Assembly (NCBI GenBank): GCA_964199315.1
Contig: OZ116712.1
Coordinates: 1,736,001 to 1,800,000 of the forward strand
Reading direction: 5' to 3'
From: Orbicella franksi
Taxonomy: Eukaryota
Length of the DNA: 64,000 nucleotides
Made by a program: the position numbers and the translations under genes. A model generated the notes under the pieces. It saw only the letters and a list, made by a program, of their open reading frames with translations. It had not been told where the DNA came from and did no database searches. This document shows positions 23,798 through 57,239 of the stretch, piece after piece; within the stretch, counting starts at the first letter, position 1; every line of letters begins with the position of its first letter.

Positions 23798-24187
23798 AAT
23801 ATTAACAACGGGGATTTATATGAGAAGTCAAATTCTGACCGGAAGGAGCATTGACGTACTTCGTTTTAGAAAATAGCCCAAAGAAAATACGCCCGCCGAT
23901 TGGTTAAAAATCTTGTTTCTAGAACTGGACAGAAACACAAGTCTGACGTAATGATGGCGCGAGCAATTAAAGAATTTCCATTTTGATGATCGAAGTGAAC
24001 AAGTTGTTTTTCTTTTTTTCTTCGCGGTATTTTCTAGGAGAAATAGAAAACATATTCTCCGTGTTTCAATCGAGTTATAGAGACGCTCGTGAAAGTTTGG
24101 GAGAACTCGAAATGTAAGCATGTAAACCAAATTTAAGGGACAGATTCATCGGTTCCGTTTACTCGGAAAGATGTCAGCTGCACTTAA

Positions 24188-24333
24188 CCGGAAGAAGAGG
24201 GTTTTTGACTGTGTTTCTGAGAACTGACGGCTAAATATAACGGACCAATGACAATGACATGGGTGATTGATTAGATGGCATAAAAACGGGGAGGTTTCTG
24301 AGAACTGAGAAACGAAAACACACTTTCCTGGAA
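24188..24333 (+). promoter_or_regulatory. Putative promoter of ZNFX1 copy 2: ETS, GAS x3, CCAAT, ISRE-like
   Basis: CCGGAAG 24188-24194; TTCTGAGAA 24215-24223 and 24296-24304; CCAAT 24245-24249; GAAACGAAA 24309-24317; TTCCTGGAA 24325-24333. All retained in the diverged paralog at 53380-53526. Confidence 0.7.
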
Positions 24334-24451
24334 TTGCGAATGCCCTTTTAAATGCAATAATTTTTTACACAGAAACACGTATTTCATGTATAATTGCTGC
24401 TCTGATAATTACCGAGAAATGTGTCGACAAATCGCCTAGAGGGGTTTAAAG
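24334..24451 (+). other. Putative non-coding first exon of copy 2 (TSS unknown); intron 1 = 24452-31466
   Basis: Consensus donor AAG|GTAAGT at 24452, conserved at 53626. The ZNFX1 ATG directly follows a polypyrimidine-CAG acceptor at 31466. Confidence 0.6.
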
Positions 24452-24821
24452 GTAAGTTGCTCAAATACTTTTCTCTTTAGGATCTCCTACTAAGTACTTG
24501 CATTACAAAGATAGGATTATTCGATTATTGCGAGACAACTGCAAGGTGCATGAAGTCGAAACACTGCCTAGTGACATACCACATGATTCTATACTGCCTT
24601 GATTCTATACAGCTACCGTTTCGCAGTGTTACAGACGTAACGATTGGAACAACGAGAAAAAATGTTGACTGAATTTTGAGCGTTGTGTATTAACTCGCCA
24701 CTAATGATTAGACTCGCTAGTCTTGCCAGTCGACTGAGTTACGACGCGAAACTTACTGTGTTAGACTATCTATTATAAAAGAAACCACTGAGAAGATTTA
24801 GTAGCGCAATGATTTAAAAAA

Positions 24822-27800
24822 TGATAGACAGGCCTAGCACGACTCCCACTGTTTCGTGATAAACGGTCTTTGACCTTTAGAGTTTAGCTCTAACAAGTAT
24901 GTCTTTCAGAGATTTTCCTCTCCTGTAGGAGATGAAAGGAGGGTCTCTGTATATTTCTCTAAGCAGGGTTGATCTTGGATTAAATGCCATTTGCTCATTA
25001 AAATGCTCTTAAGATTGGGCACTGATGGATTATATTGTGTGACAAAAGGCAATAATCTCTTTTGCAATTTTGGTTTCTGTTGTAGTGCCGACTTCCTGTT
25101 TTTAAATTCGATTTCTGCGAGGACTTTGTTGACCAGTTTCTCTGGATAGCCTCGAACACGCAAATTTGATCTGAAATTTTTGATCTTTTCTTCAAAACTT
25201 GTTTTTGAAGAGTTTGTTCTCAGAAGCCTAAGTGCTTCACCTTTTATAAAACCTTTTTTCACACCTGGAGCGTGACAGGAAGAGAAATGCGTGTATTGAA
25301 ATTTCTCAGTCGGCTTGAAGTGTGTGCAGATATCAAAGATTGAATCTTTGTTAAATCTCTCGCCTTTGAAGATAGTAGTGTCTAGGAAATTTATTTCCTT
25401 CTCTGATATTTCAGCCGTGAATTTAAGGGTAGGATGGTGCCTGTTTGCTTCTGAAATAAACTGATCTATTTCCTCTCTGTTTGTGTTCCACAACGAAAAC
25501 ACGTCATCTATGTATCTCTTCCACTCAATGGGTTTTATCTTGCTTTTACCGATAATTTTAGATTCTACTGCGGACATAAAAATGTTCGCGAAAGCAACTG
25601 CCATTTTTGTCCCCATTGCGGTACCATGGGTTTGGAGATAGTTCCTTCCGTTGAAATGGAAGGAGTTCTCCTGAGGTATAAGTCTAAGCATGTTGTGGAG
25701 TGAATTTGTAGGAATGGGAGTGTTGTTCTTATAGAAGTCTTCGTATGCTATGCATACAGTGTTTATCCCTTCCTCTTGGGGGATATTGGTGTACAGGCTG
25801 GTAACATCCATTGAAACTAGAATCGTATTTTGTTGGACTTTTGTCCTTTCTATAAAGTTAATGAAATCTGTGGTATCTTTGAGGTACGATTTTTGCGCTT
25901 TGGCAATAGGCTGGAGGATGTGGTCTATAAATGATGATATACGTTCTGTCGGACCTTCACAGCCCGAAATTATTGGTCTTCCAGTAAGAGTCGGTTTGTG
26001 AATCTTTGTTAGTATGTAAAACACTGGTATGCGCGGTGGGTTAGGTGTTTGAGAAAGCCATTCTTTGGTCTTTGCGTCTATGTGACTTCCTAAATGGAGT
26101 TCATTAATTAAATCTTTGACCTTTTGTGAGGTCTCCTTCACCATTGGTGTTTCTAGGGGCATGTAGTTCTTTCTATCATCAAGTTGAGTTTGGCCCTCTG
26201 TTATCTTATCTTGTTTGTTCATAATGACCGTTGTGGATCCTTTGTCTGCCTTTTTGATAACTATTTCTGTGTTAGATTTCAAATCTTTCAGTGCTATACG
26301 TTCTTGGTAAGGCAGGTTATTTCGTGGCTTAGTAATCTCGATCTCAGCGAGTTGTACTTTAATTTCTTCTAAATATGTTTCAAGTGCAACTGATGGTTGA
26401 ACTGGAGGTTCCCAGTTCGATTTAACGTGGAAGGGGTGCTGTTCACTATCTTTGTTGTTAAAAATGTATCGGAGACGCATTCGTCTCGCGAAATGTTTGA
26501 AGTCTAGAAGCAGTTGTTGCCTGACGCGATTCTTATCTGGAATCGGTGTTTGGATAAATTTCAGACCCCTTGATAGTAAATTTGTCTCGTGAGTTGAAAT
26601 TTTGCAATTTGAGAGGTTTTTTATGTACCTCTGGTTCAACTCAGTGTTTTTTCTTCTTATGTTTAATCTCTTGTTGCTTTTACGTTCTCGGTGTTTATTG
26701 TTTACGATTTTGCGCTTTTCTTTCTCCCTCCCTTTTCCTGAACAGTCAGAAAATACGCAGGGATAAGATTCACTCTTTTTATTGTCTAAAGCTTTCATCA
26801 TTTCTTCCACTTTCTTGATTTTGTCTGTCAGTTCGGTGGCTAAAGCTATTACATTCTCAGTGCGAGTTGACCTTTCTGGACGTGGCCTGTTCTTAACTAG
26901 ATCAGGATTGTTCGTTTTCTTCTCTCTGGTAGTGTTCGGTCTATGCTCAACTTTACTGAGCTTGATCTTGTTGCTTTCCACGCGTCTGTAGTGGTAACGT
27001 GTGAGCGCTCCGATAAGTTTTTGTTCTGCTTCTCTCCGGATATGCTTGATGTCACTTTTGAAGTCATCATCCGGCACTATGTTCACTCTTACGTTGTAGC
27101 GCAGATCTTTTGGGCACGTTTTCTTTGTTCTGTGTGCTTCCAGTTTCTCTATGGACGCTTTGGATTTTTCAACTTTCCTCTCCAGAGATGGGGCGCTGTA
27201 GCGATTGTTCAGGCGAAATCTTTTCTGAGGGATGTTTTCCTTCCTACCTTCTGTGTGGCGGCGCTTTCGGAGAGGCGACCGTTGGCCACTTTTAAATTCG
27301 CCATCTGATGCTAACAGCAATTCCTCGGACGGTTCTTGTCCGTTTTGGTCTGATGTAGATGGGCTTGACAAGAAGCCGTCTTCATTTAGTGTTTGGTTCA
27401 TGTTCTATCTCAAACAAGACTGCAGTTTCGTTCCTTTAGCGGAACTCTTCAGTTGTTTCTATGTTAAGTGTCTTAGGAATGGCAGTGATAACTGATAACA
27501 TTCCGTGGCAGATGCACGCTTCTACTGCTTTTATATCTGTTGTTAGGATCGAAAATAAAGGTTCACCATTGGTTGTATGGATTAGCCAATGCAGGGCCTT
27601 GGATTTCGATCCGAATGAAGTTGTGTTTCTTGTTAAGGTCATTTTTCTGCTTTAAAGGCGTAAAAAACTTTTTTCTCAAGCTGAGAAAATGTTGAGGGAT
27701 AGTATAGTCGTCAGTCTAAATGACTTGCTAGTCAATTTCTTTGTTATTTCCCTCTTAAAACTATTGCAGACTGTTGAATGGTACTCTATCACGTAGCAGG

Positions 27801-28436: not shown

Positions 28437-29245
28437 TTACATGGATTTTACCAGTGAGATTATAGTAATCACTTGTACACTTGAGGAACTTTGCCTGTGG
28501 TATTTCGTTTTGGATATTGAACGGTTGGATGTTATATCATCGAGAACGCTCGCCGGCGCGATCGTTTACATTCACTTCTAGGTTATAGAAATGAGCTTAT
28601 TTTGAAATTTAACATGATATGATCTTTACATAAAGGCTTTTGGTATGTTACTGTGCAACTGGTAAAAAGAGTAACTTCTTCCTGTAAACTATCTTTTATC
28701 TATGAATTAAGGCTATGTTTTTCCCTTGTGAACCCAAGACTGGGTAAAGCCGAAAAGCAACCCAGACCGTACCTGTATTCTTTGTCTACCAATTTAAGCA
28801 AATCTTGCCACACTTTCTAGCCTTGTGTTTCGGTCGCTCGTCTTGTTTTTGAAGAACCCGTCAAGTTAGCCTCACTTCACTGAATATCTAGTGACCTGTA
28901 GAGCTCAGTGTGTCATGCCTCCTTCTAAAAAGAACTGTTTTCACGGCTAATCTATATTATATTTGGCAGACAAAACAAGATTTAGCATTCTGCGTTTAAT
29001 CCAGTGTTGTGGGCTGCTCTGGCTGTGAATGTAGCTGAATGTTTTACACTGTTAAGTCATTGCAAGTACAAGAAGAAATCTTACAATGAATCGACGATTT
29101 TGGTATTTAGGAAATATAGCGAAAGATTTCATGTGTAATTTATGCTTGTTGATAATTACCCTGGGAGGACTCCTATACTATGAAAAGGACAGGGACGCTC
29201 GTCATCTCGCTCAGAGGTATAAATCAAGGATTCTGGTCTCACTAA

Positions 29246-30976: not shown

Positions 30977-31466
30977 ATTAGGAAATTGCGGAAAATGGAA
31001 ACATAAGTTTGGCAGAATTAGCGTTTTGGATTAACATAAACAAACGGCGCTCACAAAATGAGATGTTTATGATTTAATATGATCAAATTTTCATAAAATT
31101 AATCCTAAGTTCTTCTCTTTTCTATCTTAAATTTTGTTCTTTTTAGCAGAAAACTTCCCTTCAAAATGACAAAACTGTGTTGAATTTTGTCTCAATGCTT
31201 TAGTTCCGTCATTTGAATATCCCAATTAGCACAGATGTGTACGATAAATTGTTCATTTACATTGGTCCTGAAAAGCCCCAATGGGGAGTGGCCAATTACG
31301 TATACATTTCTTTTACATACATAAATAAGGTATTTTATACCATCAAACTTATTTTGTGGTCCTTCTTTACAGGTTAGCAACCTGTCCCACCACACCCCAC
31401 TTTTGCTCAGTTATTCTGAATGGCTACACAACCATGTCACCCTAATGTTTTTGATATTTTTCACAG

Positions 31467-34400
31467 ATGTCACGTGACTCCCGAAAGTTAGGGAAGGACT
31501 CAGCTTGGTGTCGGAAACGCAAGTCCGAGGATGTGCCTAGGTTCGATGACGTAAAACGGAGAAGAACGGGAAATGGAGAAGGAACAGACAAAACCACTCG
31601 GCCCATTGGGTTTAGAGAACTGGAAAACATCTGTAGAGAAGCTGTTCCAGAGACGGGAATTCTAGGACTGGTTCAGAAAGCCGAAAGATTTGAAGCCCTC
31701 TTAACTTCAGAAGAAATCAGACCAGATTTGTTGAAGTTGGTAATTTCTGCTTTTCGTCTTTTGTGCTCGGCGAACAGCTTAACGACCGGAAACGCGGAGA
31801 AGTTACTACGCTCTCCGGCAGCGGAGAATTTCATAACAGGGCCCGTTCTTTCCACGTTTGTCAAAAAGATGCCTTTTTCAGAATACTGGAAAGACGAAAG
31901 CGATCGTGTCACTGTGCTAAACGATCTGGCTGAAATTTCTCTTGCGTTGATTCAACGGCTCGGTGAGAAAATATTGTACGGGCTGCCGCTTCCCGAACTA
32001 AGTAACTCGTTGGATGAGCTAAAAGAGGAGAATCTCATCAAGGACGCCTGCGAACTTGAGAAGAAGCTTCAGCAAGTCAAGGAGTTGAAACATGAAGTGA
32101 TTCGGCGGGCAAAGTCTGCGTATGATCAACAATCAGGGGCGGAGCCTCCGCAGAACTTCAGAGAGCTCAGCGTCATTCCGCAAGCAGCAGACCTTTGTTT
32201 CAAGCCTTTTCTGCGCGAAAACATCGTAGACAGAAAGTTTAAGGACCTGGATCATTATCTTGACGTGCAGTTTCGCCTTCTAAAAGAAGACTTCGTAATG
32301 CACCTACGCGATGGCATCAAACAGCTAACAAGAGAAAACAACTCCTTGGAAACGAGTCCTACCAAGAAAGTTAAACGCGCGGATGATGTCTCTGTGTACA
32401 GTGACGTCACAGTCCTGCATCCCGTATGCAACAGGAAAGGCCAGGTTTACAGAATCAGGTTCAACCCGTCTCATCCAAGGGTAAAACGAGTAAACTGGGA
32501 AAGGTCCAAACGACTCAAGTTCGGTTCGTTGGTTTGCCTTTCTTCAGATGACTTCAACACACTACTTGTCTTCGCAACGGTGGAAAATCGACGTGCCGAG
32601 GGGCTAAGTGTTGGTGAATTGGATGTGCGTTTTGAAAACGTCACGAAAGAGGAAATAAATATTTTTGTCACAGGGAAAGAAAGGTTTGTCATGATAGAGT
32701 CGCCTGCTTATTTTGAAGCGTACAGACACGTGTTGGGGGCATTGAAGGAAATAAAACCTGAAGAATTCCCTTTCCAGAAGCATATTGTGGAATGCTGTCG
32801 GGAAGTTGGACCTCCAGCGTATCAAGTACAAAGACAAAGAGAAGACAAAGAAGTTCTGTTTAATTTCACAGGCGTTCTTACAAAGAAAGAGCCTTCAATG
32901 TCTTCTCAAAGACGTCATTCCGATACCGTGAATTCGAAGAAGTCCATGAAGATGAGCCCAACGTCCACCTCACAGCAAGAACAGCTGTCAGCCGTTAACG
33001 AATCGTCGAACAGCCTGGATGTTGCTATGGACGTCGAAGTGCCTCAAGAGATCTTTAATTGGCCAGACAGAAAAAGCCTCGGTTTCAATGAGTCTCAGAT
33101 GCGCGCGTTTAAACTGGCGCTGACCAAAGAGTTCGCTGTGATCCAAGGACCGCCGGGAACAGGGAAAACGTACGTTGGTTTGAAGATAGCTCAAGCTCTC
33201 TTGCAGAACACCTCTTTTTGGCAAAACCGCGGTGAAAGATCTCCAATCTTGATGGTGTCTTACACGAATCACGCTTTGGATCAGTTCCTGGAAGGTCTTC
33301 TTCCAATGCACGGTGAGTTTACTCAGCGCTTTATATATGTTATATTTTTCACGTAAGAGATTACAGGTGATCTAGAAAGACACACATGCATAGATTGACA
33401 GATAGATAAATAAAGGTGACTCATCACTGTTCAGATAACTGTACAAGATATTCGGTGTACCGCGAACGAAACTATTTCTAAGTATTTCTAGAGGTTCTGA
33501 CTTTGTCGTTAAACCTCAAAAAGATGCGCATTGAGCAGCAGGCTACATGCAAATAAACAACGGGAAATATGGAAAGAGAGGAAACAAACAAAACTAATGA
33601 TTTTGGTGGCTCGGTTTTGACCAAAAAAGTGATATGTGAGCATAAGCTGGGGATTGGAAGCATAAAGTAAGGAAATAATAACTTGACGGTCGTTTATTAA
33701 TTGACAGGTATAGTTCGCGTTGGCGGCCGCAGCAAAAGTGAAAAATTGAAGAGCCATTCTCTGGTGTCAATTCGTCGCCAACCATGCCAGCCTGATATGA
33801 CGATCCGCAAGGCAAGAAACGCAGCTAAGAGAGATATTCGTTATGAGAAAGAATCATATCGGCGTTCTTCACTCTTGTTAGAAGCCTCAAGATCAAGCAT
33901 TTTGTCGATGGATGTCTTTTCCCAACACAGGTATATTCGACGCCGGCATTATGCTCAATTTACAAGAAACCCTTGGAATGGATCGGTTGATGAAGAGCTT
34001 CTAAAGTGGCTCTACGTACAAAAGAAGGAAAGCTCGCAAAGTTCCCACTCGAAAGATGTGAAAAAGCATCATGAAAGAGATGACTTCCAAATGGAGTTTG
34101 AGGCGCGAGGATTCAGTTTTGACAACAGAGGGGTTTTGGACAAAGATGACAACGCCGTGCGTATGGGACTAGCTGTGCTCTCGTGGAAAGATGCTACGAA
34201 CTCCGGAAAGGTGAGACAAAATTTGATTAGCGAACAAGCGATGTCTGATAACGAAGAAAGAGGAGTTCGTGATATCTACCGTTTGCCGAGTGAGGACCGT
34301 TGGAGGTTATACAGATTATGGCGGCAGAGATTGGTCAACGACCAAAGGCAGCAGTTGCAAATTTGCCAGGTGGAGTTTGAAGAGGCTTTAGCCCGTGATA

Positions 34401-45987: not shown

Positions 45988-48900
45988 CTTTTTATGTCAA
46001 AAAGCAATTTCTTACAGACTGTCTTGTTTGCGCGCAAAATTTGAATGTGACACTTCAACTGAAAGGAATATCAGTGTCAGCAACATCTCCTACTCTTATT
46101 GGACGGTTCAAGTGTGACAGGTGTCGGGTATCAGCCAGGAGAATCTGTCATATTCGCAGCGGCCGATGAGATTTCACTTGTGGTTTTCTCTCTTTGTCGA
46201 GAACAGCAAATAAAGGTAAAGATAATTTGTACATATATTTCATTTTCTTCATGGCTGCGATATACTTACATGTTTATACCCCCAAATTGAGGCATCACAT
46301 TTCTTATCACTAACAAACATGCCACTTAGGTCACCCGGTTATGCAAATCAGGGTCTGCGTTACTGACTCATTCTTGTAAGATAATGATGGTTTGAAACGT
46401 GATGTATTTCACCTCTGCCATTTCCGGGGCGTAGAAGACATCAAGATTTTAAGAACGTCTCCTTATGTTTTGAAGCTGTTGTAGGTATAAGAAAAATAAT
46501 CATAGTACAGAGATTTAACCATCTTGTTCCACTTTTCATTATTCATTCACGTGTTGACTTCAACTTTCGTATCGTTGTTCTATCAACACTGATATGTCGA
46601 TCGATGAAATGTTTTTCCCTGAGCATTTAGAACTGGGAATTTAACACCAATGTGCCCTGCAGTGCTCTTAAATTTTATTGAAAGGATGTGTTAGGCATAT
46701 GTGTCTAATCCCTATATAATAAGAATAAATTAAGGTCGAAAGTGTATTTATCATTTAATTTAAGTGTTCAATTGACGTATAACATTTGATTTACTAGCAC
46801 GTTGTACGTAAGTGGCTGACCATTTATGCCTCTTATTTACGCATTTTCAATGTTCGACTATCTTTTTATTCGTAGAATCGAACTATTTTATTCATCTCAA
46901 AACCAACCAGTCATGACTGATCCAACTAAGGTTAATATACCCAAGTGACGATACAATGAATGGTCTATCGATCCGGTTTTTGGACTTCAACGTGTTGCAG
47001 ATCATCTGCAGACGCTGCAGATATTCTGCAGATCTGTTGTTCGTCTGTTTTCGTCTGCAGTCTTAAAATCGGGAAGAGTTTTCAAGCTCAACGTCTGCAG
47101 CAGACTGAAAACAGACTCTGCAGACGATAAATTAGTCTGCAGTTGATCTTTTTTTGTCAAAACAGATCTGTTGCAGATCTGCTGCAGATCTGCTCGTTTC
47201 GTACGGGAGGGAACACAAATAGGGAAATTACAGGCAACCCACGGTGATCGCCGGGGTGCACCCGCAGCATATGAACGGGGCAGCCACGTAATGCTTACAC
47301 TATGGCAACAATGCATTTGAGGATGCACGGGAGAAAGGGAGCAAATTGTGCTTGAAATGTTAGATGGACGAACCTGCGGTGAAATGGTCACGTAAACGCA
47401 TGGGAAACCCACAGTGGAAATACAGGGAAAACACGAAGTACCCTGCGGGAACTCACAGGGGAAGAAGGGGCAAAATAGAGGGTACCCCGGCTGTGGAACC
47501 ATAGTGGAAGTACAGGGACCTGTGGGAATCCACAGCGGAAGCACGCGGGGGAAATAGAAGGTACCCTGTGGGAACCCACAATGGAAGAATGGGGAATATA
47601 GGGGATACCCTGTGGGAAAGAATAAAGGGTAACCAGCGAGAACACACACTGAAAATCATCAAATTTAAGAGAGAAAACATAACCCAGTAGTTTATACGGT
47701 AATACTTGTTTATTTACCCCGTAATTTAATTCCTTACTCCTACACCAATCAATTTATTAGAAATGGTAATGCAGCAAAGTGGAGACCTAGTAACTCATTA
47801 ATGTACTACATTATACACAACACGAAGTCGTTAATGCGGTCCTGTTTAAAGCAATTTTTACTCAGAAAAGTAACTGGTAACGCTAGACGATGGCCTCAGA
47901 AGAAACTCACGCCACTTTTGCATCCAATCAGAAGTAAAACCAAAACCAATCTTGACTCTCTCACACACGTTTTCCCGCGCTTCTCGTCAGCTACATGTAT
48001 TTGCTTCGAGTTTTCTTTGTTTCATTGGATTGTCTGCGTCCTACCCTGGGGTTTGATTTTACGACACTCAATTAAAAAACCTACAGTAACAAAACTCAAG
48101 AATAGAGAAATTCAGTACGAACTCTAAAGTTAAAAGCCCAACCAACGAGTTTCGTTTCACAATGTGATCCCGGAAACAATCTAGTATTTTACGCTAGGAC
48201 ACAAATGATGGCAGTGTAAGAGGGAATAATCAGCTACCCTAATTAACTTCATTCACTGAGTTATCGATTAACTGGAGATGCTACTCAATACACTGCATAC
48301 ATCTAAGATGCTTGGGACAATCTCTTTTCGTTTTTCTAGGATCGATCACAACTGGTATAGAGTCCATAATTTAAATCACAGCTTTTTATGGACCGAACCA
48401 CTCTTTAAATCTCAGTTTACTTGCTAAAAAAATTCTTACCGTATTAGAATATATATTACTTTACATAAACGCATTATCGCTTTATCTGAATATATTAATA
48501 TGATGAATAGATGATGTTATTTATTACTATTTCTATACATACAAATACTGTCTGTATTTATCCAAGGTTTCCATTGCCTGACCAGCTGAAAAAAATTGAC
48601 AATTCGAACTTACATTAAAGACGCAGTTTAAGACTTCAGAATCCTGGGCTCATTCAAACTTGACACGTCATAACAAAAAAATCCAAAACTTTTGAAACGG
48701 GGGCAAATGGTACGGAAATTTCCTTGTAAAGTTCCTGTCAAGAATTGTTTTAAAATTTCTGAAATGTGAACCATTCAACCGAAAATTCAGGAAATTCCAG
48801 GATGACAATAAAATGGAACAGTAATTCCCGGGACGGAATTTTCCAAAAAAATTGGGTATAGTTCCCGAGGTTGTTCTCTTTTCCAGAAATTGGGGGAAAT

Positions 48901-49176: not shown

Positions 49177-49465
49177 TTAACGCCAACACTGTTTATCGTA
49201 ATTCTGTTGGCCATGACCAAACCTCGTTCTGGTGTTGTTCATCTCAAACGCCGGCATATTTCCTTCAGTCAATCGGTGTTCTGTTCCACCAATCACAACC
49301 CTGCATTCAGGACACGTGCTTCGCTGCATGGCTTGTCCACATCCGCCAATCGTGTAGACATGTCCCTGGGGGCATTTGTACCAACGACCTTGAGACAGGT
49401 TCATCGCAGACACGATCTCTTTCTTTTCTTCGGGCGTTATTGGCGAGAGGAAGCGGTAGGCTTGC
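49177..49465 (-). other. Second orphan RZ-finger exon (unspliced 146-aa ORF 49617-49177)
   Basis: Paralog of 19024-19297; acceptor CAG at 49468-49466; RZ core WYKCPQGHVYTIGGCGQAMQRSTCPECRVVIGGTEHRL; C-terminus differs because of a 1-nt indel. Confidence 0.85.
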
Positions 49466-52400
49466 CTGCAAAGAAAAACAGGAATAATTGTCATGTCAAG
49501 GTGTCTTGAAAGATCTGCAACTGAGGTAGTTTGCTTTTGCAAACATGTGATAAGCATATCTTTTAGCAGACAGGGCGTGACGGCCAGGCGTGAGAGATTC
49601 CGGAAGATTGATTCCATATTTAAGATTTGACTGGATGTCTTTTATCCAGTATTAGATCATAAGAAATCATGAGATTCAAGCTGTAGAAAATTTACTCTGA
49701 TGATGTGCATATTAAGGGTGAGGTCTGGTTTTTAATTTACAGTGCATGAAATTCAAATGAAAGATAGTTTGTCATGGACTGAGTTGCAACCTTTATTCCA
49801 ACCTTTATTCCAATCAACTGAAACCTGAAATGAATGGCTTACAATACGTGTACATGCAGTACAGAAACTAATCATTATTGTAAGTAATCTATTAAAAGTA
49901 TGTTAATTAATGTTAATTTCTATGCTTTTAACAGGAAAATAGCGCCCAAGAAGGACATCAGCAACAAGAAAAGGAAAGCGACAGAAATAATTAATTGAAA
50001 TGTACATACTGTCAAAATGCTGCAATAGTTTCCAGTGGAATGGTCTAACTGGAGAGCAAATGTTTTTTGCAATGGATCAGAAACTTCCAATGTTACTAAT
50101 AATACAATTGCTTTTTTATTTACTGTATAATGTGGTATGGATTAAACAAGACTTAAAAAAAGACAAAAAAATTACTGTTACTCTGAATAATTTTTCCTTA
50201 CATCAACTTAATGCACCGAGCAATAACTGCTGCATATATCGTAATTATACATGTAGCGCAATTTAAGGTGGCTCTGACTGAAGCCTTATTTGTTGCCTTT
50301 GTTAAATTAGAAAAAATGTCAACTTACATTGTGGCCCGTAACCAAATTAATTCCAAGTTTAGAATTTTTATTCTTAGAAATAAATTGAATGTTGCAATGT
50401 GTGCTGTTGGTCATCGTCACAACAGTTGTCATCAAGTTTTGCTTTAGAAAATATTTCAGAGCCACCTTAAATTTTCCTGTGTGGAATGTTTGTTATTTGG
50501 CAAGACGTTATGTTCCGGTATATATGTATACTGTATGTATTTCAAATGTGAATATTACTAATATGTTGGCTTTCTGTATATTTTTACTTGTTGCACTTAG
50601 GCTAAAATTTTGTGAATTTACCAATTTACAAACCCACACAGACCTACCAGTAATGCCAAATGCCTGCCTTTGAATTTTGCATCGCAATTAAATTATTTTT
50701 CATAAGAGGCTTCATTGACTTTGTTCAAAGGAGAGAAAACTGATTGTCAACAATAATAATAAAAGGAGAGAATGTTGCAGTTAAACCTCCTGTTTAGAGG
50801 TGCTTTCCATTTGATCAAAAATCCTGGTTTGCATTTCTGGAAATTCCCAATGGTAAATGGGAAAGGATTTTCCAAAATTTCCAGAAAAGAGGACAACCTT
50901 GCGAGGTATACAGAAATTTTTGGAAATTTCTAATTTCTGTTTCCCTCCCGGCATTTCCATAGTTTTCGGTTGAATGTTTTGGGTTTTTTGGAAATTCAAC
51001 AATTTCAAATTTTCTGGCAATTTCTGCACCATTTGTCCATTTTGAAATTTTTGGAATTATTGGTTGAATGGAGAGCACCCTATGACACCACGTGTACCTG
51101 CTAGAAAACAAAACATTGCTTATGATCCATAAGTTAGTAATTCCTGTTTAACTAAAGACTTAACTAAATGAGCATCCTACAATTACATTAGAGTTCTACA
51201 TGTACTATAGAGCAGTTTCACTCGTGACCACCAGCCATGGGCATTCACTAGAGCAAAAGAAAACATTTTATAAGAAAATAATTCAACTCCCATGGGATTG
51301 GTTTGAGGTACCAACATGACCACCGTTTCATTGTGTTTAGATGCCAAAATGGCTGTCATGTTGTCATGAAAACACTCTATAGAGGCCATTGTATCGCTGA
51401 ATCCATTAATTAGATTGCCTGTGAAATAAGTATGTAAGCAAATAATGAGAATACTTCCCAAATTAAACAACAATACAAAAAATAATTCAATATTTCCCTT
51501 GGGTTAAACGAAAAACGTAATACAAAACCCAGGAGTGAATGAGATTCTCTGCTTTGTTCGAGCTCAATGTGAATTGCTGTACTTGTACATGGACATATTG
51601 TAAATGGATGTCTTCAGTTTATTAACCTGTGATACGATAAGTCCCTTATTTTTCTCTCAGAACAACTCAAGTTGGTGAGCATGCAAGCATGCATGAAAAC
51701 CAGCTTGCGGAGGAGTTGGCATGTTCACATGCTCACCCACTAACTAACTCTAAGAAAAAAATGAGAGGCTATTCATAGGATGTCTGACTTGTAGGCTTTA
51801 AAATCAGAAGTGAGGGAAGGATATGAGTGTTTGTCTTGTAAACTCCAGGGCCAGGTTGTTCGAAGGTGGGTTAACCCTAACCTAGGATTAAAAGTTAACC
51901 AAAGTATAAATTTATCTTGTATTTAGATATTTTTGACTGCTTAAGATTACTCAAGCTCAAAACTGAAGGACAAGCAATAGAACCTGGAAACCGCACTGAA
52001 AAGTTGCAAAACTGAAATCAACCCACGCATTTCATAGGTTAGCTTAATCGGGCTTTGAACAACCTGGCCCAGAATATTAGAAAATATGTGAGTTTTCTTT
52101 GTAGTTATTTTTATCTCTTTGCTAGTGAGACACAAGAAGTAAGGTTAGGTTGCCCGGTTTTTTGGTTTTTGTTTTTGTTTGTTTTTTTTTTGGGGGGGGG
52201 GGTGCACAAAAGACGCAGAAAGATTGCAATTTTTTACATGTATACCTTGACTTGCACCCTGTGTGTTCTTTTGTATCTAAAACAGTCAGAAAGCATGACT
52301 TATTACTGAGTTATGCTCTTATTGTGGCTGTTCTGTTTTAAATATCTAGGGTCTTATAACAATAGATTTATATTTGTAAGTTAAAAAACTTACTATCTTT

Positions 52401-53379
52401 AATTTTCATGGATTGAATGGTGTATGATATTTAAGTTACTTGAAAGTTTGCTTAACCACTGCAGTGACCAAGTATTTCAAAGAGTAAGTTCAAGTAACAA
52501 TACTCAATGTTGTTAACTACCAAGTTCTATTCTGAAGGAATATTGTGAATTTGTACATTAATTTTGCCTGATTTCAGAAGGGTTAAGTAAAGTGATACAG
52601 CATTTTAGTCGTCAACTTTATTGTGCATGGCAATTCTTTGTACAATAAATAATTATGGTTCAGGTATAGCTATTAACCTTTGTGACATTTTCAGTCTCTT
52701 GTTTGAAATATGAATTCTCCTTGCTTGTTTCCACACAGTTCTTTTAATTGTAGTTAGGAGAATGGTCAAGTATATCAAGACAGTATCTTGAAGATTAATA
52801 ATCATCACTTGTGCGAATCATTGCTCGACAAAGAATCAAATAACTGGGATGCAAGCACACTATGCACACCCTTACTTGAATTTCTCACCAGTAATTCATC
52901 ACCCCCACACCCTCCCTGGAGGGAAATTACCTTTTTGCAAATCTTTCGCTAAAACAGTTCCATTACGGCGCCCACAGATGCTAACATTAACAACGGGAAT
53001 TTATACGAGAAGTCACATTCTGACCAGAAAGGAAATTGACGTATTTCGTTTTAGTAAATAGCCCAAAGAAAATGCGCGCGCTGATTGGTTGAAAATCTTG
53101 TTTCTAGAACCCGATAGAAACACAACTAACTTGACGTAATGATGGCGGGTGCGAAGAGAATTTAGATTTTGATGATGACAGTAAACTCGATAGAAATCTA
53201 TTTCTCGAGAGAACGTCATTGAAAATTCTTCCCGAAAGGCGGTATTAGACTTCCTAAGGGTCTGTAATGGGCGATTTTAGGGCCGGTAAAATTTTATTTA
53301 GGACCTATGTAAGCATGTAATCCAAATTTAAGGGACAGATTCACCGGGTTCGTTTAGTTTTAAAGTCAGCTGCATTTGA

Positions 53380-53526
53380 CCGGAAGAAGAATATTTTTTG
53401 ACTGTGTTTCTGAGAATCGACGGCTAAAAATAACGGACCAATGACAACGACGTATGCATGGGTGATAGTTATGCATAAAACGGGGGAGGTTTCTGAGAAC
53501 TGAGAAAGGAAACAGGTTTCCTGGAA
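53380..53526 (+). promoter_or_regulatory. Putative promoter of ZNFX1 copy 3; first-exon donor at 53626
   Basis: CCGGAAG 53380-53386; TTCTGAGAA 53408-53416 and 53491-53499; CCAAT 53438-53442; GAAAGGAAAC 53504-53513; TTCCTGGAA 53518-53526; AAG|GTAAGT at 53626. Confidence 0.7.
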
Positions 53527-54704
53527 TCGAGAGTATGTTCAAAGAGAAATTCGTATTTCATGTGTTATTGCTGCTCTGAAAATCACCTAGATATGTGTCG
53601 AAAAATCGCCTAGAGGAGGTTTAAGGTAAGTTGCTCAAATACGTGTCTCTTTAGGGTCTGCTATTTGCTATGAAAGTAAGACAGGTTTGTTCGCATTGCG
53701 AAGCAACTGCAGGTTGGCAGCATGAAGTCGGAACACTGCTTTGTGCTACATACCACATGATTCTACACTGCCTTGCAGCGTTTCCTTTTCCGCTATCGTT
53801 TCGAAAAGTTTTACAGACGCAACGATTGGAACGACGAGAAAAGATGTTGAACTTTTGAGTGTAGTTAGTACATTAAACTTGTCGACAATAATTCATAGAC
53901 CCTCTAGTCTAGCCAGTCAAGTTACACCGCAAAACTTACTATCTATTATAACAAAAACCACTCAGAACGTCCAGCGGCACTACACATAAATCTACCGTCA
54001 CTTTCAAACCACAGTTAGACCGTGGAGAAGGGCATCTCTCATTTAAATGCCGACCGTGCTCTTCATAATAAACTAAAATTAAAATGAAACACGACCTTTC
54101 ATGGTATTTCGTTTTGAACAAAGGACGGTTAGATGTTTATGTCATCCAGAACATTCTCCGCGACCATTCAGACTCACCTCTGTGTGATAAAAATCAGCTA
54201 ATTTTGAATGATTTGATCGGTACATATAGACTTGTGGTAGGTAACTGTGTAACTGGTAAAAAAGAGTAAGTGAAAAACGGCAAATAGACAATTAACGTCG
54301 AGTGAATTATTTAAAATTATCGTAACTATTTCGTGTAAACTATCTTTTATCAATGAATTTAGGCAACTTTCTTCCAAGAGGTATAACTGAATAGCAAACC
54401 AGATCTTATCTGTATCATTTGACTACAAATTAAAGCAAATTTTGCCACACTTTCTAGACTTGTGTTTCGGTCGTCTTTTGTTACCTCAATTTATTGAATA
54501 TCTATAGTGAACTGTGGAGCCCATTGTGTCACGCTTCCTTCTAGAGCGTACACTGAATTAATATTCAGCTATCCCGCATCTTCATATTTGAGTATAAGGC
54601 CACTGACAGACAAAACAAATTAAGATTTAATTTAATCTGCGTAACTGCGTTTTGTTCGGTATGTGGTCTGTTAATTCTCATGTCCTGTCCTCGCTATGCC
54701 AGTT

Positions 54705-57015: not shown

Positions 57016-57239
57016 ACAAAATATTTCTAACTCCAGGGTTAGTGTTAACGGTATTCATTCTGATCAATGCAGCCTGATTCTGTAGTCTTTTCTGTATATA
57101 GATCAACAAAAACAACTATTGTTTGTTTTCATGGCCATAAATACATACAGTGTTGCAAAAGCTCTCAAACAACACTTCCCCACATACCCCACCCTTTTTC
57201 AGTTATTTTGATTACTTACTTACCTAATATTCTTCATAG

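What the first reader, a model, noticed from the sequence alone, without database searches (positions are those of the whole stretch)
24188..24451. Interferon-stimulated-gene-like promoter (GAS x3 + ISRE + ETS) conserved between old paralogs in an animal lineage without known interferons
Seen: in both 24188-24333 and 53380-53526 the order ETS (CCGGAAG), GAS (TTCTGAGAA), CCAAT, GAS (TTCTGAGAA), ISRE-like (GAAACGAAA or GAAAGGAAAC), GAS (TTCCTGGAA) is preserved while intervening bases vary, followed by a conserved GTAAGT donor. The GAS-ISRE-GAS triplet is packed into under 40 bp. Established: TTCN3GAA is the STAT site and GAAAN(1-2)GAAA the IRF site; vertebrate ZNFX1 is an ISG; cnidarians have STAT and IRF genes but no recognised interferon. 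Inference: phylogenetic footprint of a pre-interferon STAT/IRF antiviral regulon.
Basis: partly seen in the sequence, partly recalled or inferred. Interest (0 to 1): 0.8.

Follow-up and report, generated by a model that had tools for sequence, protein, structure and literature searches.

The report
STAT-site promoter of coral ZNFX1 genes
This is the likely promoter and first non-coding exon of tandem ZNFX1-like antiviral helicase genes in a stony coral; its STAT-type sites are conserved across corals and probably a sea anemone, which fits published cnidarian data but adds little new in kind.

Summary
Both copies carry ETS, GAS, CCAAT, GAS, a purine-rich IRF-like element, GAS and a consensus splice donor, in that order, upstream of two of three tandem ZNFX1-like genes.

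- **Why B versus C alone is weak.** The whole 1-kb block is about 73-85% identical. Promoter blocks of tandem paralogs have also been homogenised in at least one related genome.
- **What the wider comparison shows.** I compared 13 promoter blocks from about six coral genomes and Nematostella. TTC-N3-GAA is 16-fold enriched in the 300 bp before the exon-1 donor (31 found, 1.9 expected). Every other spacing, N0-2 and N4-7, is at background.
- **Conserved layout.** A GAS pair 27-31 bp apart, with a third site about 85 bp upstream, recurs in blocks that BLAST no longer aligns.
- **Weaker motifs.** CCAAT is also invariant within the alignable coral family. The ISRE-like element is confined to the window's close relatives and is polymorphic. 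ETS is only moderately kept.
- **Not shown.** The transcription start site and factor binding are unmeasured.
- **Prior work.** In Nematostella, ZNFX1 homologs are poly(I:C)-induced, and Stat5 and ETS motifs top the enrichment list for induced genes.

Verdict: a real, probably STAT-responsive promoter. It is a new example of a known kind.

The parts
23796..24794 (+). Conserved block of gene B: upstream module, proximal promoter, putative exon 1 and the first ~340 bp of intron 1
   Evidence: Self-BLAST 23796-24794 vs 52981-53967, 73.5%; alignment A1; also aligns to L003, L004, L005, L006 and L008
24188..24194 (+). ETS-type site CCGGAAG (ACCGGAAG)
   Evidence: Intact in winB, winC, L004, L005 and L001; altered in L003, L006 and L008. 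No more conserved than random segments
24215..24223 (.). GAS1, TTCTGAGAA (palindromic STAT-type site)
   Evidence: Invariant in 7 of 7 aligned promoters and present in Desmophyllum L001
24245..24249 (+). CCAAT box with conserved flanks (ACCAATG)
   Evidence: Invariant in 7 of 7 aligned promoters and in L001
24296..24304 (.). GAS2, TTCTGAGAA
   Evidence: Kept in 6 of 7 aligned promoters, lost in L003
24309..24317 (+). Purine-rich IRF-like element GAAACGAAA. It matches the IRF core AANNGAAA but is not a canonical ISRE
   Evidence: The central base is G in copy C, in L015 and in other species. Lost in L005 and L006. Permutation p = 0.2-0.4
24325..24333 (.). GAS3, TTCCTGGAA
   Evidence: Kept in 6 of 7 aligned promoters. 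L005 and L008 change only the spacer (TTCCCGGAA). Lost in L006
24346..24354 (+). TATA-like TTTTAAATG; inferred only
   Evidence: Read. Shared with L005 and L006, deleted in copy C
24380..24451 (+). Putative non-coding exon 1. The 5' end is not mapped. It carries a uATG with a 6-codon mini-ORF
   Evidence: Conserved up to the donor. uORF table
24452..24457 (+). Splice donor GTAAGT
   Evidence: GTAAGT or GTGAGT in all 12 coral blocks; GTAACT in the Nematostella block
31465..31469 (+). Acceptor AG followed directly by the ATG of the first coding exon of gene B (ORF 31467-33356)
   Evidence: YAG|ATG (AAG|ATG in L003) in 8 of 8 genes; ZNFX1 domain and AAA_11
52981..53967 (+). Conserved block of gene C (paralogous promoter, exon 1 and start of intron 1)
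   Evidence: 99.4% identical genomic contig L013 from the same species
53380..53526 (+). Copy C motif series: ETS 53380, GAS 53408, CCAAT 53438, GAS 53491, GAAAGGAAAC 53504, GAS 53518
53626..53631 (+). Splice donor GTAAGT of copy C
57238..57242 (+). Acceptor AG followed directly by the ATG of the first coding exon of gene C (ORF 57240-59183)

Best explanation
**What it is.** The interval 24188-24451, and its paralog 53380-53625, is the proximal promoter plus a short non-coding first exon of ZNFX1-like antiviral helicase genes. These genes form a tandem array in a stony coral.

**Conserved core.** The core consists of a CCAAT box and three STAT-type palindromes (T-TTC-YNR-GAA). The layout is fixed: a distal site, about 85 bp, then a pair 27-31 bp apart. 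The pair lies roughly 100-170 bp before the exon-1 donor.

**Proposed mechanism (inferred, not shown).**
- A constitutive CCAAT factor such as NF-Y keeps the promoter competent.
- The cnidarian STAT protein occupies the GAS sites, possibly cooperatively at the close pair. Nematostella has a single STAT gene, which published annotations label STAT5A.
- STAT occupancy raises transcription during the dsRNA/antiviral response.
- An ETS-class site (ACCGGAAG) and a purine-rich element that could bind an IRF or ETS factor act as lineage-specific modifiers.

**What is shown.** Motif presence, their conservation, the spacing-specific enrichment, and the splice-site logic.

**What is inferred.** The transcription start site, the identity of the binding factors, and inducibility.
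For: 1. **Gene identity.** The ORFs carry PF25396 ZNFX1, AAA_11 and AAA_12 and an RZ finger.
2. **Exon logic.** The donor is conserved as GTAAGT or GTGAGT in all coral blocks. An acceptor lies immediately before the ATG in 8 of 8 genes.
3. **Footprint.** In the 7-sequence alignment A3 the named motif columns have mean pairwise identity 0.90 against 0.67 for the rest. Permutation gives p <= 5e-4. GAS1 and CCAAT are invariant.
4. **Spacing control.** In the 300 bp before the donor of 13 blocks, TTC-N3-GAA occurs 31 times against 1.9 expected. N0-N2 and N4-N7 are all at background. TTCYNRGAA occurs 26 times against 0.6 expected.
5. **Architecture.** Site spacings are 81-89 bp and 27-30 bp in the window's family. 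They are 87 and 30 bp in L009 block p2, whose first coding exon is only 58-60% identical in protein with four-fold sites near saturation. The pair is 31 bp apart in the Nematostella block.
6. **Substitutions keep the motif.** The spacer changes from CTG to CCG in L005 and L008 while the site stays intact.
7. **Nematostella locus L012.** GAAAGTGAAAGT, a CRE-like site, two GAS sites and a donor lie 3.8 kb upstream of a ZNFX1-like gene. Simulation gives P about 0.002.
8. **Literature.**
   - Nematostella ZNFX1 homologs are induced by poly(I:C), with log2FC of 5.3, 3.7 and 3.3 (supplement of PMC8476169).
   - Stat5b, ELF5, Stat5a::Stat5b, Stat5a, STAT1 and ELK3 are the six top-ranked motifs in the top-10% induced genes (same supplement).
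   - STAT5A, IRF2, ELF1 and ELK1 rise in activated immune cells (PMC13319465).
   - Znfx1 is listed with Ifi44 and Rsad2 in Stylophora.
Against: - No transcript, CAGE or binding data were available, so the start site and exon 1 are inferred.
- The promoter blocks are homologous, so the Poisson P values overstate independence. There are about six quasi-independent lineages.
- Gene conversion or unequal crossing-over between paralogous promoter blocks inflates the B-C similarity.
- Within orthologous pairs, intron 1 aligns as well as the promoter does, so those comparisons carry no information.
- nvSTAT knock-down did not measurably reduce cGAMP-induced expression in Nematostella (PMC8713801).
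- The Nematostella block is not proven to belong to the ZNFX1-like gene. The first annotated exon there lacks an ATG, and one of its GAS sites overlaps a perfect kappa-B site.
- The Desmophyllum paralog has lost the proximal GAS pair, next to a MITE-like insertion.
Confidence: 0.68

Rival explanations
1. The similarity is shared ancestry and concerted evolution only. The motifs are carried along in a recently homogenised 1-kb block and are not under selection.
For: - Promoter blocks L005 and L006 group together at 100/100 although their coding exons belong to different paralog clades. The AU test rejects the coding topology at p = 5e-6.
- The B-C promoter path length is 0.23, against 0.53 for B-L005. 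In the coding tree B is closer to L005 than to C.
- The block starts exactly at the boundary of the recent 26.5-kb duplication.
- Orthologous introns align as well as the promoters do.
Against: - GAS sites persist in blocks that BLAST no longer aligns (L002 and L009 blocks p1 and p2, L012), with the same pair spacing.
- Only the N3 spacing is enriched.
- Motif columns beat random segments of the same block.
- Changes in the spacer keep the palindrome.
Confidence: 0.1
2. The promoter is real, but the TTCYNRGAA palindromes are read by a factor other than STAT. Candidates are a BCL6-like repressor or a Rel/NF-kappaB factor. In that case the module is not an interferon-like STAT/IRF circuit.
For: - NF-kappaB, not STAT or IRF, was the factor with a demonstrated role in the Nematostella cGAMP response (PMC8713801).
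- In L012 one GAS site overlaps a perfect GGGACTTCCC site.
- No binding data exist.
Against: - No kappa-B consensus occurs in the coral blocks: 1 hit in 13 blocks, and that one is in Nematostella.
- The strict N3 spacing and the YNR spacer are the STAT signature (established knowledge).
- STAT5-type matrices are the top enriched motifs in poly(I:C)-induced Nematostella genes.
Confidence: 0.15
3. The block is the promoter or first exon of a different transcript (a non-coding RNA or another gene), or a transposon-derived promoter that happens to sit upstream of ZNFX1-like genes.
For: - The exon-1 donor lies 3.6-8 kb upstream of the ATG exon.
- Retroelement and MITE-like insertions lie nearby.
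- No transcript evidence was available.
Against: - There is one block per ZNFX1-like gene in most loci examined, and two tandem blocks per gene in L002 and L009. All are on the same strand and upstream of the gene. No extra dispersed copies appear in 64 kb or in the other loci.
- The acceptor directly before the ATG requires an upstream exon.
- No other called gene lies between the block and the ATG exon.
Confidence: 0.07

Closest known systems
Vertebrate GAS/ISRE-driven interferon-stimulated gene promoters (for example IRF1 and GBP-type promoters; vertebrate ZNFX1 is itself interferon-stimulated, PMC13710534)
   Same: - Several TTCN3GAA palindromes lie in a compact proximal promoter of an antiviral helicase gene.
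- ETS-class and IRF-like elements sit beside them.
- The orthologous gene family is pathogen-inducible in both lineages.
   Different: - No interferon is known in the host.
- The window has no canonical ISRE (GAAANNGAAA), only an IRF core with N1 spacing that is not conserved.
- The sites match the STAT5-type TTCYNRGAA.
- Binding and induction were not tested here.
The poly(I:C)-induced gene set of Nematostella vectensis, with Stat5/STAT1/ETS motif enrichment (Lewandowska et al. 2021, PMC8476169)
   Same: - The motif classes rank the same way: STAT5-type GAS first, then ETS, with IRF far behind.
- ZNFX1 homologs are among the strongly induced genes.
   Different: - That work is a statistical enrichment using vertebrate matrices over 500 bp plus the first exon and intron.
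- Here a single promoter is resolved to the base, with cross-species conservation and a fixed site spacing, in stony corals.
Clustered STAT92E sites in Drosophila JAK/STAT target enhancers (recalled knowledge, not checked here)
   Same: Multiple TTCN3GAA sites with T/A-extended flanks (TTTC...GAAA) are used as the invertebrate STAT read-out.
   Different: - The Drosophila sites sit in a defined cytokine-receptor-JAK pathway.
- According to a review, no functional study of JAK-STAT exists in non-bilaterians (PMC11193209).

Membership tests
ISG-type promoter (GAS and ISRE driven) | One or more GAS palindromes TTCN3GAA in the proximal promoter | tested here: met
   Three per copy. Present in all 13 related blocks, 16-fold enriched, and only at N3 spacing.
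ISG-type promoter (GAS and ISRE driven) | Canonical ISRE, GAAANNGAAA(C/G) | tested here: not met
   The window has GAAACGAAA and GAAAGGAAAC (N1 spacing, IRF core only). A canonical ISRE was found in only 1 of 13 blocks, the Nematostella block L012.
ISG-type promoter (GAS and ISRE driven) | Motifs more conserved than flanking sequence | tested here: met
   Met for the motif set as a whole and for GAS plus CCAAT (p <= 0.002). Not met for the ISRE alone or ETS alone.
ISG-type promoter (GAS and ISRE driven) | Sites lie within about 200 bp of a mapped transcription start | tested here: inconclusive
   Only the exon-1 donor is fixed; GAS centres lie 104-251 bp before it in the window's close relatives. 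No transcript data were available.
ISG-type promoter (GAS and ISRE driven) | Gene is induced by viral mimics or cytokine, and STAT/IRF occupy the sites | not testable with these tools
   Indirect only. Nematostella ZNFX1 homologs are induced by poly(I:C). STAT knock-down was negative for cGAMP induction.
ZNFX1 helicase family (the genes downstream of the promoter) | ZNFX1 domain plus SF1 helicase core (AAA_11 and AAA_12) | tested here: met
   PF25396 at E = 9e-32 and 9e-34; AAA_12 at E = 3e-41 and 5e-41.
ZNFX1 helicase family (the genes downstream of the promoter) | C-terminal RZ-type zinc finger | tested here: met
   PF20173 at 13823-14113 for gene A, E = 4e-24. A homologous segment lies at 38809-39217 for gene B.
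Transposon-derived STAT/IRF enhancer (MER41-like co-option) | Dispersed multi-copy element with terminal repeats | tested here: not met
   There are only two copies in 64 kb, each upstream of a ZNFX1-like gene. Other loci have one block per gene, or two tandem blocks in L002 and L009.

The most novel reading that the evidence does not exclude
The fixed three-site layout would be a conserved docking platform for cooperative binding of the cnidarian STAT. The layout is one GAS site about 85 bp upstream of a GAS pair 27-31 bp apart, kept from sea anemone to stony corals. STAT would be activated downstream of RLR or STING sensing without any interferon. This would be an ancestral STAT arm of antiviral transcription that predates cytokine control. 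It would also give the first defined cis-element for testing STAT function in a non-bilaterian.
Probability: 0.25. Interest if true: 0.75.

Novelty: new member of a known kind. Interest (0 to 1): 0.5.

Why it matters
Cnidarians induce many homologs of interferon-stimulated genes without any known interferon. The factor that drives this response is unresolved. NF-kappaB explains part of it, and knock-downs of STAT and the IRFs were negative but inconclusive.

This promoter offers a compact, base-resolved test object. It has three conserved STAT-type sites at fixed spacing upstream of a gene family already shown to be dsRNA-inducible in Nematostella. Reporter mutagenesis or STAT binding assays on about 250 bp could settle whether STAT controls antiviral genes in non-bilaterians.

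The result also warns that comparing tandem paralogs within one genome is a poor phylogenetic footprint, because their promoter blocks can be homogenised.

Tried and rejected
- **P0167 look-up.** The protein was not on record.
- **L010 and L011.** These contigs from the window's species have only 0.8-2.2 kb upstream of the ATG exon. They did not reach gene A's promoter.
- **L007.** This C-type paralog shows no homolog of the promoter block within 10 kb. A Maverick/Polinton-like insertion (DNA polymerase B plus integrase) lies upstream and its helicase ORF is split. I left it out of the promoter set.
- **Metagenome scan with the exon-1 20-mer.** I hoped for spliced transcripts. It returned only genomic contigs of the same species (L013, L015, L016) and two unrelated hits (L014, L017), so there is no junction evidence.
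- **HSF reading.** Rejected for the proximal module: TTCN2GAA occurs once against 1.8 expected.
- **NF-kappaB reading.** Rejected for the coral blocks.
- **Divergent minus-strand gene sharing the promoter.** tblastn with a full-length ZNFX1 homolog finds only the three plus-strand genes. The minus-strand RZ-finger ORF at 19024-19449 is an isolated fragment.
- **Transposon origin of the block.** Rejected on copy number.
- **Simulation.** The first run timed out; it was redone.
- **Mapping L012 to NVE18649.** This rests on my recollection that DS469507 is scaffold 1, which makes DS469994 scaffold 488. Treat it as probable, not shown.

Full report
**1. What the window holds**

The window contains three tandem ZNFX1-like genes on the plus strand.
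- Gene A covers about 1-14.1 kb, and its promoter lies outside the window.
- Gene B has its first coding ORF at 31467-33356.
- Gene C has its first coding ORF at 57240-59183.
- The ORFs hit the Pfam ZNFX1 domain and the SF1 helicase domains AAA_11 and AAA_12. An RZ-type zinc finger closes gene A at 13823-14113.

The duplication history has two layers.
- A and B belong to a recent duplication of about 26.5 kb: 1-22800 matches 26582-52984 at 96-97% identity.
- C is an older paralog. Exons are 72-79% identical in DNA. The first coding exon is 67% identical in protein and 61% identical at four-fold degenerate sites.

The host is a cnidarian.
- The closest named protein comes from the stony coral Desmophyllum pertusum.
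- Near-identical contigs occur in ENA and JGI assemblies.

**2. The observation**

- The order is ETS, GAS, CCAAT, GAS, IRF-like, GAS.
- A donor AAG|GTAAGT follows, with GT at 24452 in B and at 53626 in C.
- The GAS-ISRE-GAS triplet spans 38 bp in B and 36 bp in C.

On chance: these are the only two places in 64 kb with three TTCN3GAA sites within 120 bp. A Markov simulation gives such a triple in 3.6% of random 64-kb sequences.

**3. Is it a promoter with a first exon?**

In all eight related genes I aligned, a polypyrimidine tract and a YAG (AAG in L003) sit immediately before the ATG of the first coding exon. A non-coding upstream exon must therefore exist.

The conserved block ends in a donor that is GTAAGT or GTGAGT in all twelve coral blocks. 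These are the two forms a working donor tolerates at position +3.

In most loci one block lies upstream of each ZNFX1-like gene, on the same strand, 1.6-8 kb before the ATG exon. L002 and L009 carry two tandem blocks per gene. In gene B the first intron is enlarged by a reverse-transcriptase ORF on the minus strand at 24906-27401.

No transcript data could be reached, so the start site is inferred.

**4. Why B versus C alone is weak evidence**

The whole 1-kb block is alignable, including about 340 bp of intron 1, with the core at 80-85% identity. Between orthologs, such as C against L004 or L008, most of intron 1 aligns as well as the promoter does. Those comparisons carry no information.

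The promoter tree also disagrees with the coding tree.
- The first coding exons place L006 with the C-type clade (support 100/99) and L005 outside it.
- The promoter blocks of L005 and L006, which lie on the same contig, are each other's closest relatives (100/100).
- The AU test rejects the coding topology at p = 5e-6.
- B and C promoters are much closer to each other than B is to L005 (path 0.23 against 0.53). The coding exons show the reverse.

Promoter blocks of tandem paralogs have therefore been homogenised by gene conversion or unequal crossing-over. The block boundary at 23796 and 52981 coincides with the edge of the recent duplication, which fits that picture.

**5. The wider test**

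I collected 13 promoter blocks.
- The window's B and C.
- L003 and L004, which come from one genome.
- L008.
- L005 and L006, which come from another genome.
- Desmophyllum L001.
- Two tandem blocks (p1 and p2) in each of L002 and L009. This is a more distant paralog family at 58-61% protein identity, with four-fold sites at 36-43% identity.
- A block in Nematostella L012.

Results:
GAS1 and CCAAT are invariant. The ISRE-like element alone (p = 0.2-0.4) and ETS alone are not distinguishable from random segments.
- *Spacing control.* In the 300 bp before the donors, TTC-N3-GAA occurs 31 times against 1.9 expected. TTC-Nk-GAA for k = 0-2 and 4-7 is at background in every case. The STAT5-type form TTCYNRGAA accounts for 26 of the 31, against 0.6 expected.
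- *Site spacing.* Spacings are 81-89 bp and 27-30 bp in the window's family, 87 and 30 bp in L009 block p2, 30 bp in L002 block p2, and 31 bp in Nematostella.
- *Substitutions.* Changes inside the spacer (CTG to CCG) leave the palindrome intact in L005 and L008.

The blocks are homologous, so the P values overstate independence. The spacing specificity and the survival of the layout in blocks that BLAST no longer aligns cannot be explained by shared ancestry alone.

**6. The ISRE and ETS parts**

GAAACGAAA and GAAAGGAAAC have N1 spacing. They match only the 8-nt IRF core, which is common in this AT-rich DNA (1.6-fold enrichment, not significant).
- The element occurs only in the window's close relatives.
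- It is replaced in L005 and L006.
- Its central base differs within the species: L015, a 98.5% identical contig, has G where B has C.
- It also contains a GGAA core, so an ETS-type reading is equally possible.

ACCGGAAG is intact in five blocks, including Desmophyllum, and altered in three.

A textbook ISRE (GAAAGTGAAAGT) does sit next to the GAS pair in the Nematostella block. Simulation puts a GAS pair with an adjacent canonical ISRE in 10 kb at P about 0.002. That block is not proven to be the promoter of the gene 3.8 kb downstream, and one of its GAS sites overlaps a perfect kappa-B site.

**7. Context from the literature**

- Vertebrate ZNFX1 is described as interferon-stimulated (PMC13710534).
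- In Nematostella, several ZNFX1 homologs are strongly induced by poly(I:C): NVE19355 at log2FC 5.3, NVE9167 at 3.7 and NVE18649 at 3.3. The six top-ranked motifs in the top-10% induced genes are Stat5b, ELF5, Stat5a::Stat5b, Stat5a, STAT1 and ELK3, with IRF1 far lower (supplement of PMC8476169). This ranking of STAT, then ETS, then IRF matches the conservation ranking found here.
- NVE18649 lies on scaffold 488. That is probably the scaffold of L012, by accession arithmetic recalled from memory.
- Activated Nematostella immune cells raise STAT5A, IRF2, ELF1 and ELK1 (PMC13319465).
- A Stylophora preprint lists Znfx1 with Ifi44 and Rsad2.
- Against the hypothesis: knock-down of the single nvSTAT, or of each nvIRF, did not measurably change cGAMP-induced expression, although the authors list technical caveats (PMC8713801).
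- A review states that no functional study of JAK-STAT exists in non-bilaterians (PMC11193209).

**8. Verdict**

The feature is real. It is best read as the promoter and 5' leader exon of ZNFX1-like paralogs, with a conserved CCAAT box and a conserved three-site STAT-type array.

The interferon-like reading is supported for the GAS part, weak for the IRF part, and untested at the level of binding and induction.

The concept is already in the literature as a motif enrichment. The new contribution is a base-resolved, evolutionarily conserved example with a fixed architecture. I rate it a new member of a known kind, of moderate interest.

Noticed in passing
window 24386-24439 and 53560-53613; related loci: The putative exon 1 carries a conserved uATG (GAAATG) 21-38 nt before the donor, opening a mini-ORF of 1-7 codons in 11 of 12 coral blocks. 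In the window's close relatives the peptide is MCR(Q/K)IA*. The only other codon changes are synonymous (TGT to TGC in L003, ATC to ATA in L008). A longer in-frame 17-codon uORF exists in B, C and L004. This suggests translational control of the leader.
   Followed up: partly
window 23800-23990 and 52985-53170: A second conserved module lies about 250-400 bp upstream of the GAS array. It holds TGACGTA(A) CRE-like sites, an inverted CCAAT (GATTGG), another CCGGAAG (copy B only) and a GTTTCTAGAAC palindrome with N2 spacing. It could be an upstream enhancer or a degenerate older promoter copy.
   Followed up: partly
window 28498-28927, 54102-54543 and 1917-2346: A block inside intron 1 is conserved between the B-type and C-type paralogs at 72-75% identity and is also present in L004 and L008. 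It has a near-invariant TTTCGTTTT (an IRF core on the minus strand; TTTCGCTTT in L008) and two TTCTAGAA palindromes. It may be an intronic enhancer or an alternative exon.
   Followed up: partly
window 24906-27401 (minus strand); partial copy at 1-820: An intact 831-aa ORF with a reverse-transcriptase domain (RVT_1) sits in intron 1 of gene B, and also in gene A. It accounts for part of why B's first intron (about 7 kb) is longer than C's (about 3.6 kb).
   Followed up: no
window 19024-19449 (minus strand) and 49237-49468 (minus strand): An isolated, inverted copy of the RZ-type zinc-finger exon (PF20173, E = 1.5e-22) lies about 5 kb downstream of the true RZ exon in each duplication unit. It is either a small separate gene or a pseudo-exon.
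   Followed up: partly
window 42495-47207 and 22800-23796: The B unit has 4.7 kb that the A unit lacks. About 1 kb just upstream of B's promoter block has no counterpart upstream of C or in other genomes. Both are probably insertions. None of the ORFs tested there has a Pfam hit.
   Followed up: no
L001 8067-8285 (Desmophyllum pertusum): A hairpin-forming, MITE-like insertion splits the promoter just after the CCAAT box. The proximal GAS pair is missing in this paralog. A TATATAA box and a new GAS site inside exon 1 are present instead.
   Followed up: partly
L002 1640-1840 and 2500-2690; L009 8019-8352 and 8879-9179: In the more distant paralog family the promoter plus exon-1 unit is tandemly duplicated about 870 bp apart. 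Each copy has CCAAT, a CRE-like site, two GAS sites and its own donor, which implies alternative first exons.
   Followed up: partly
L007 480-5421: A Maverick/Polinton-like element (protein-primed DNA polymerase B plus an rve integrase) lies upstream of a ZNFX1-like paralog. That paralog's helicase ORF is split and it has no recognisable promoter block.
   Followed up: no
L012 6160-6175 (Nematostella vectensis): A perfect NF-kappaB consensus, GGGACTTCCC, overlaps the first GAS site of the pair, next to a canonical ISRE and a TGATGTCA site. A SEFIR-domain gene lies downstream of the ZNFX1-like gene.
   Followed up: no
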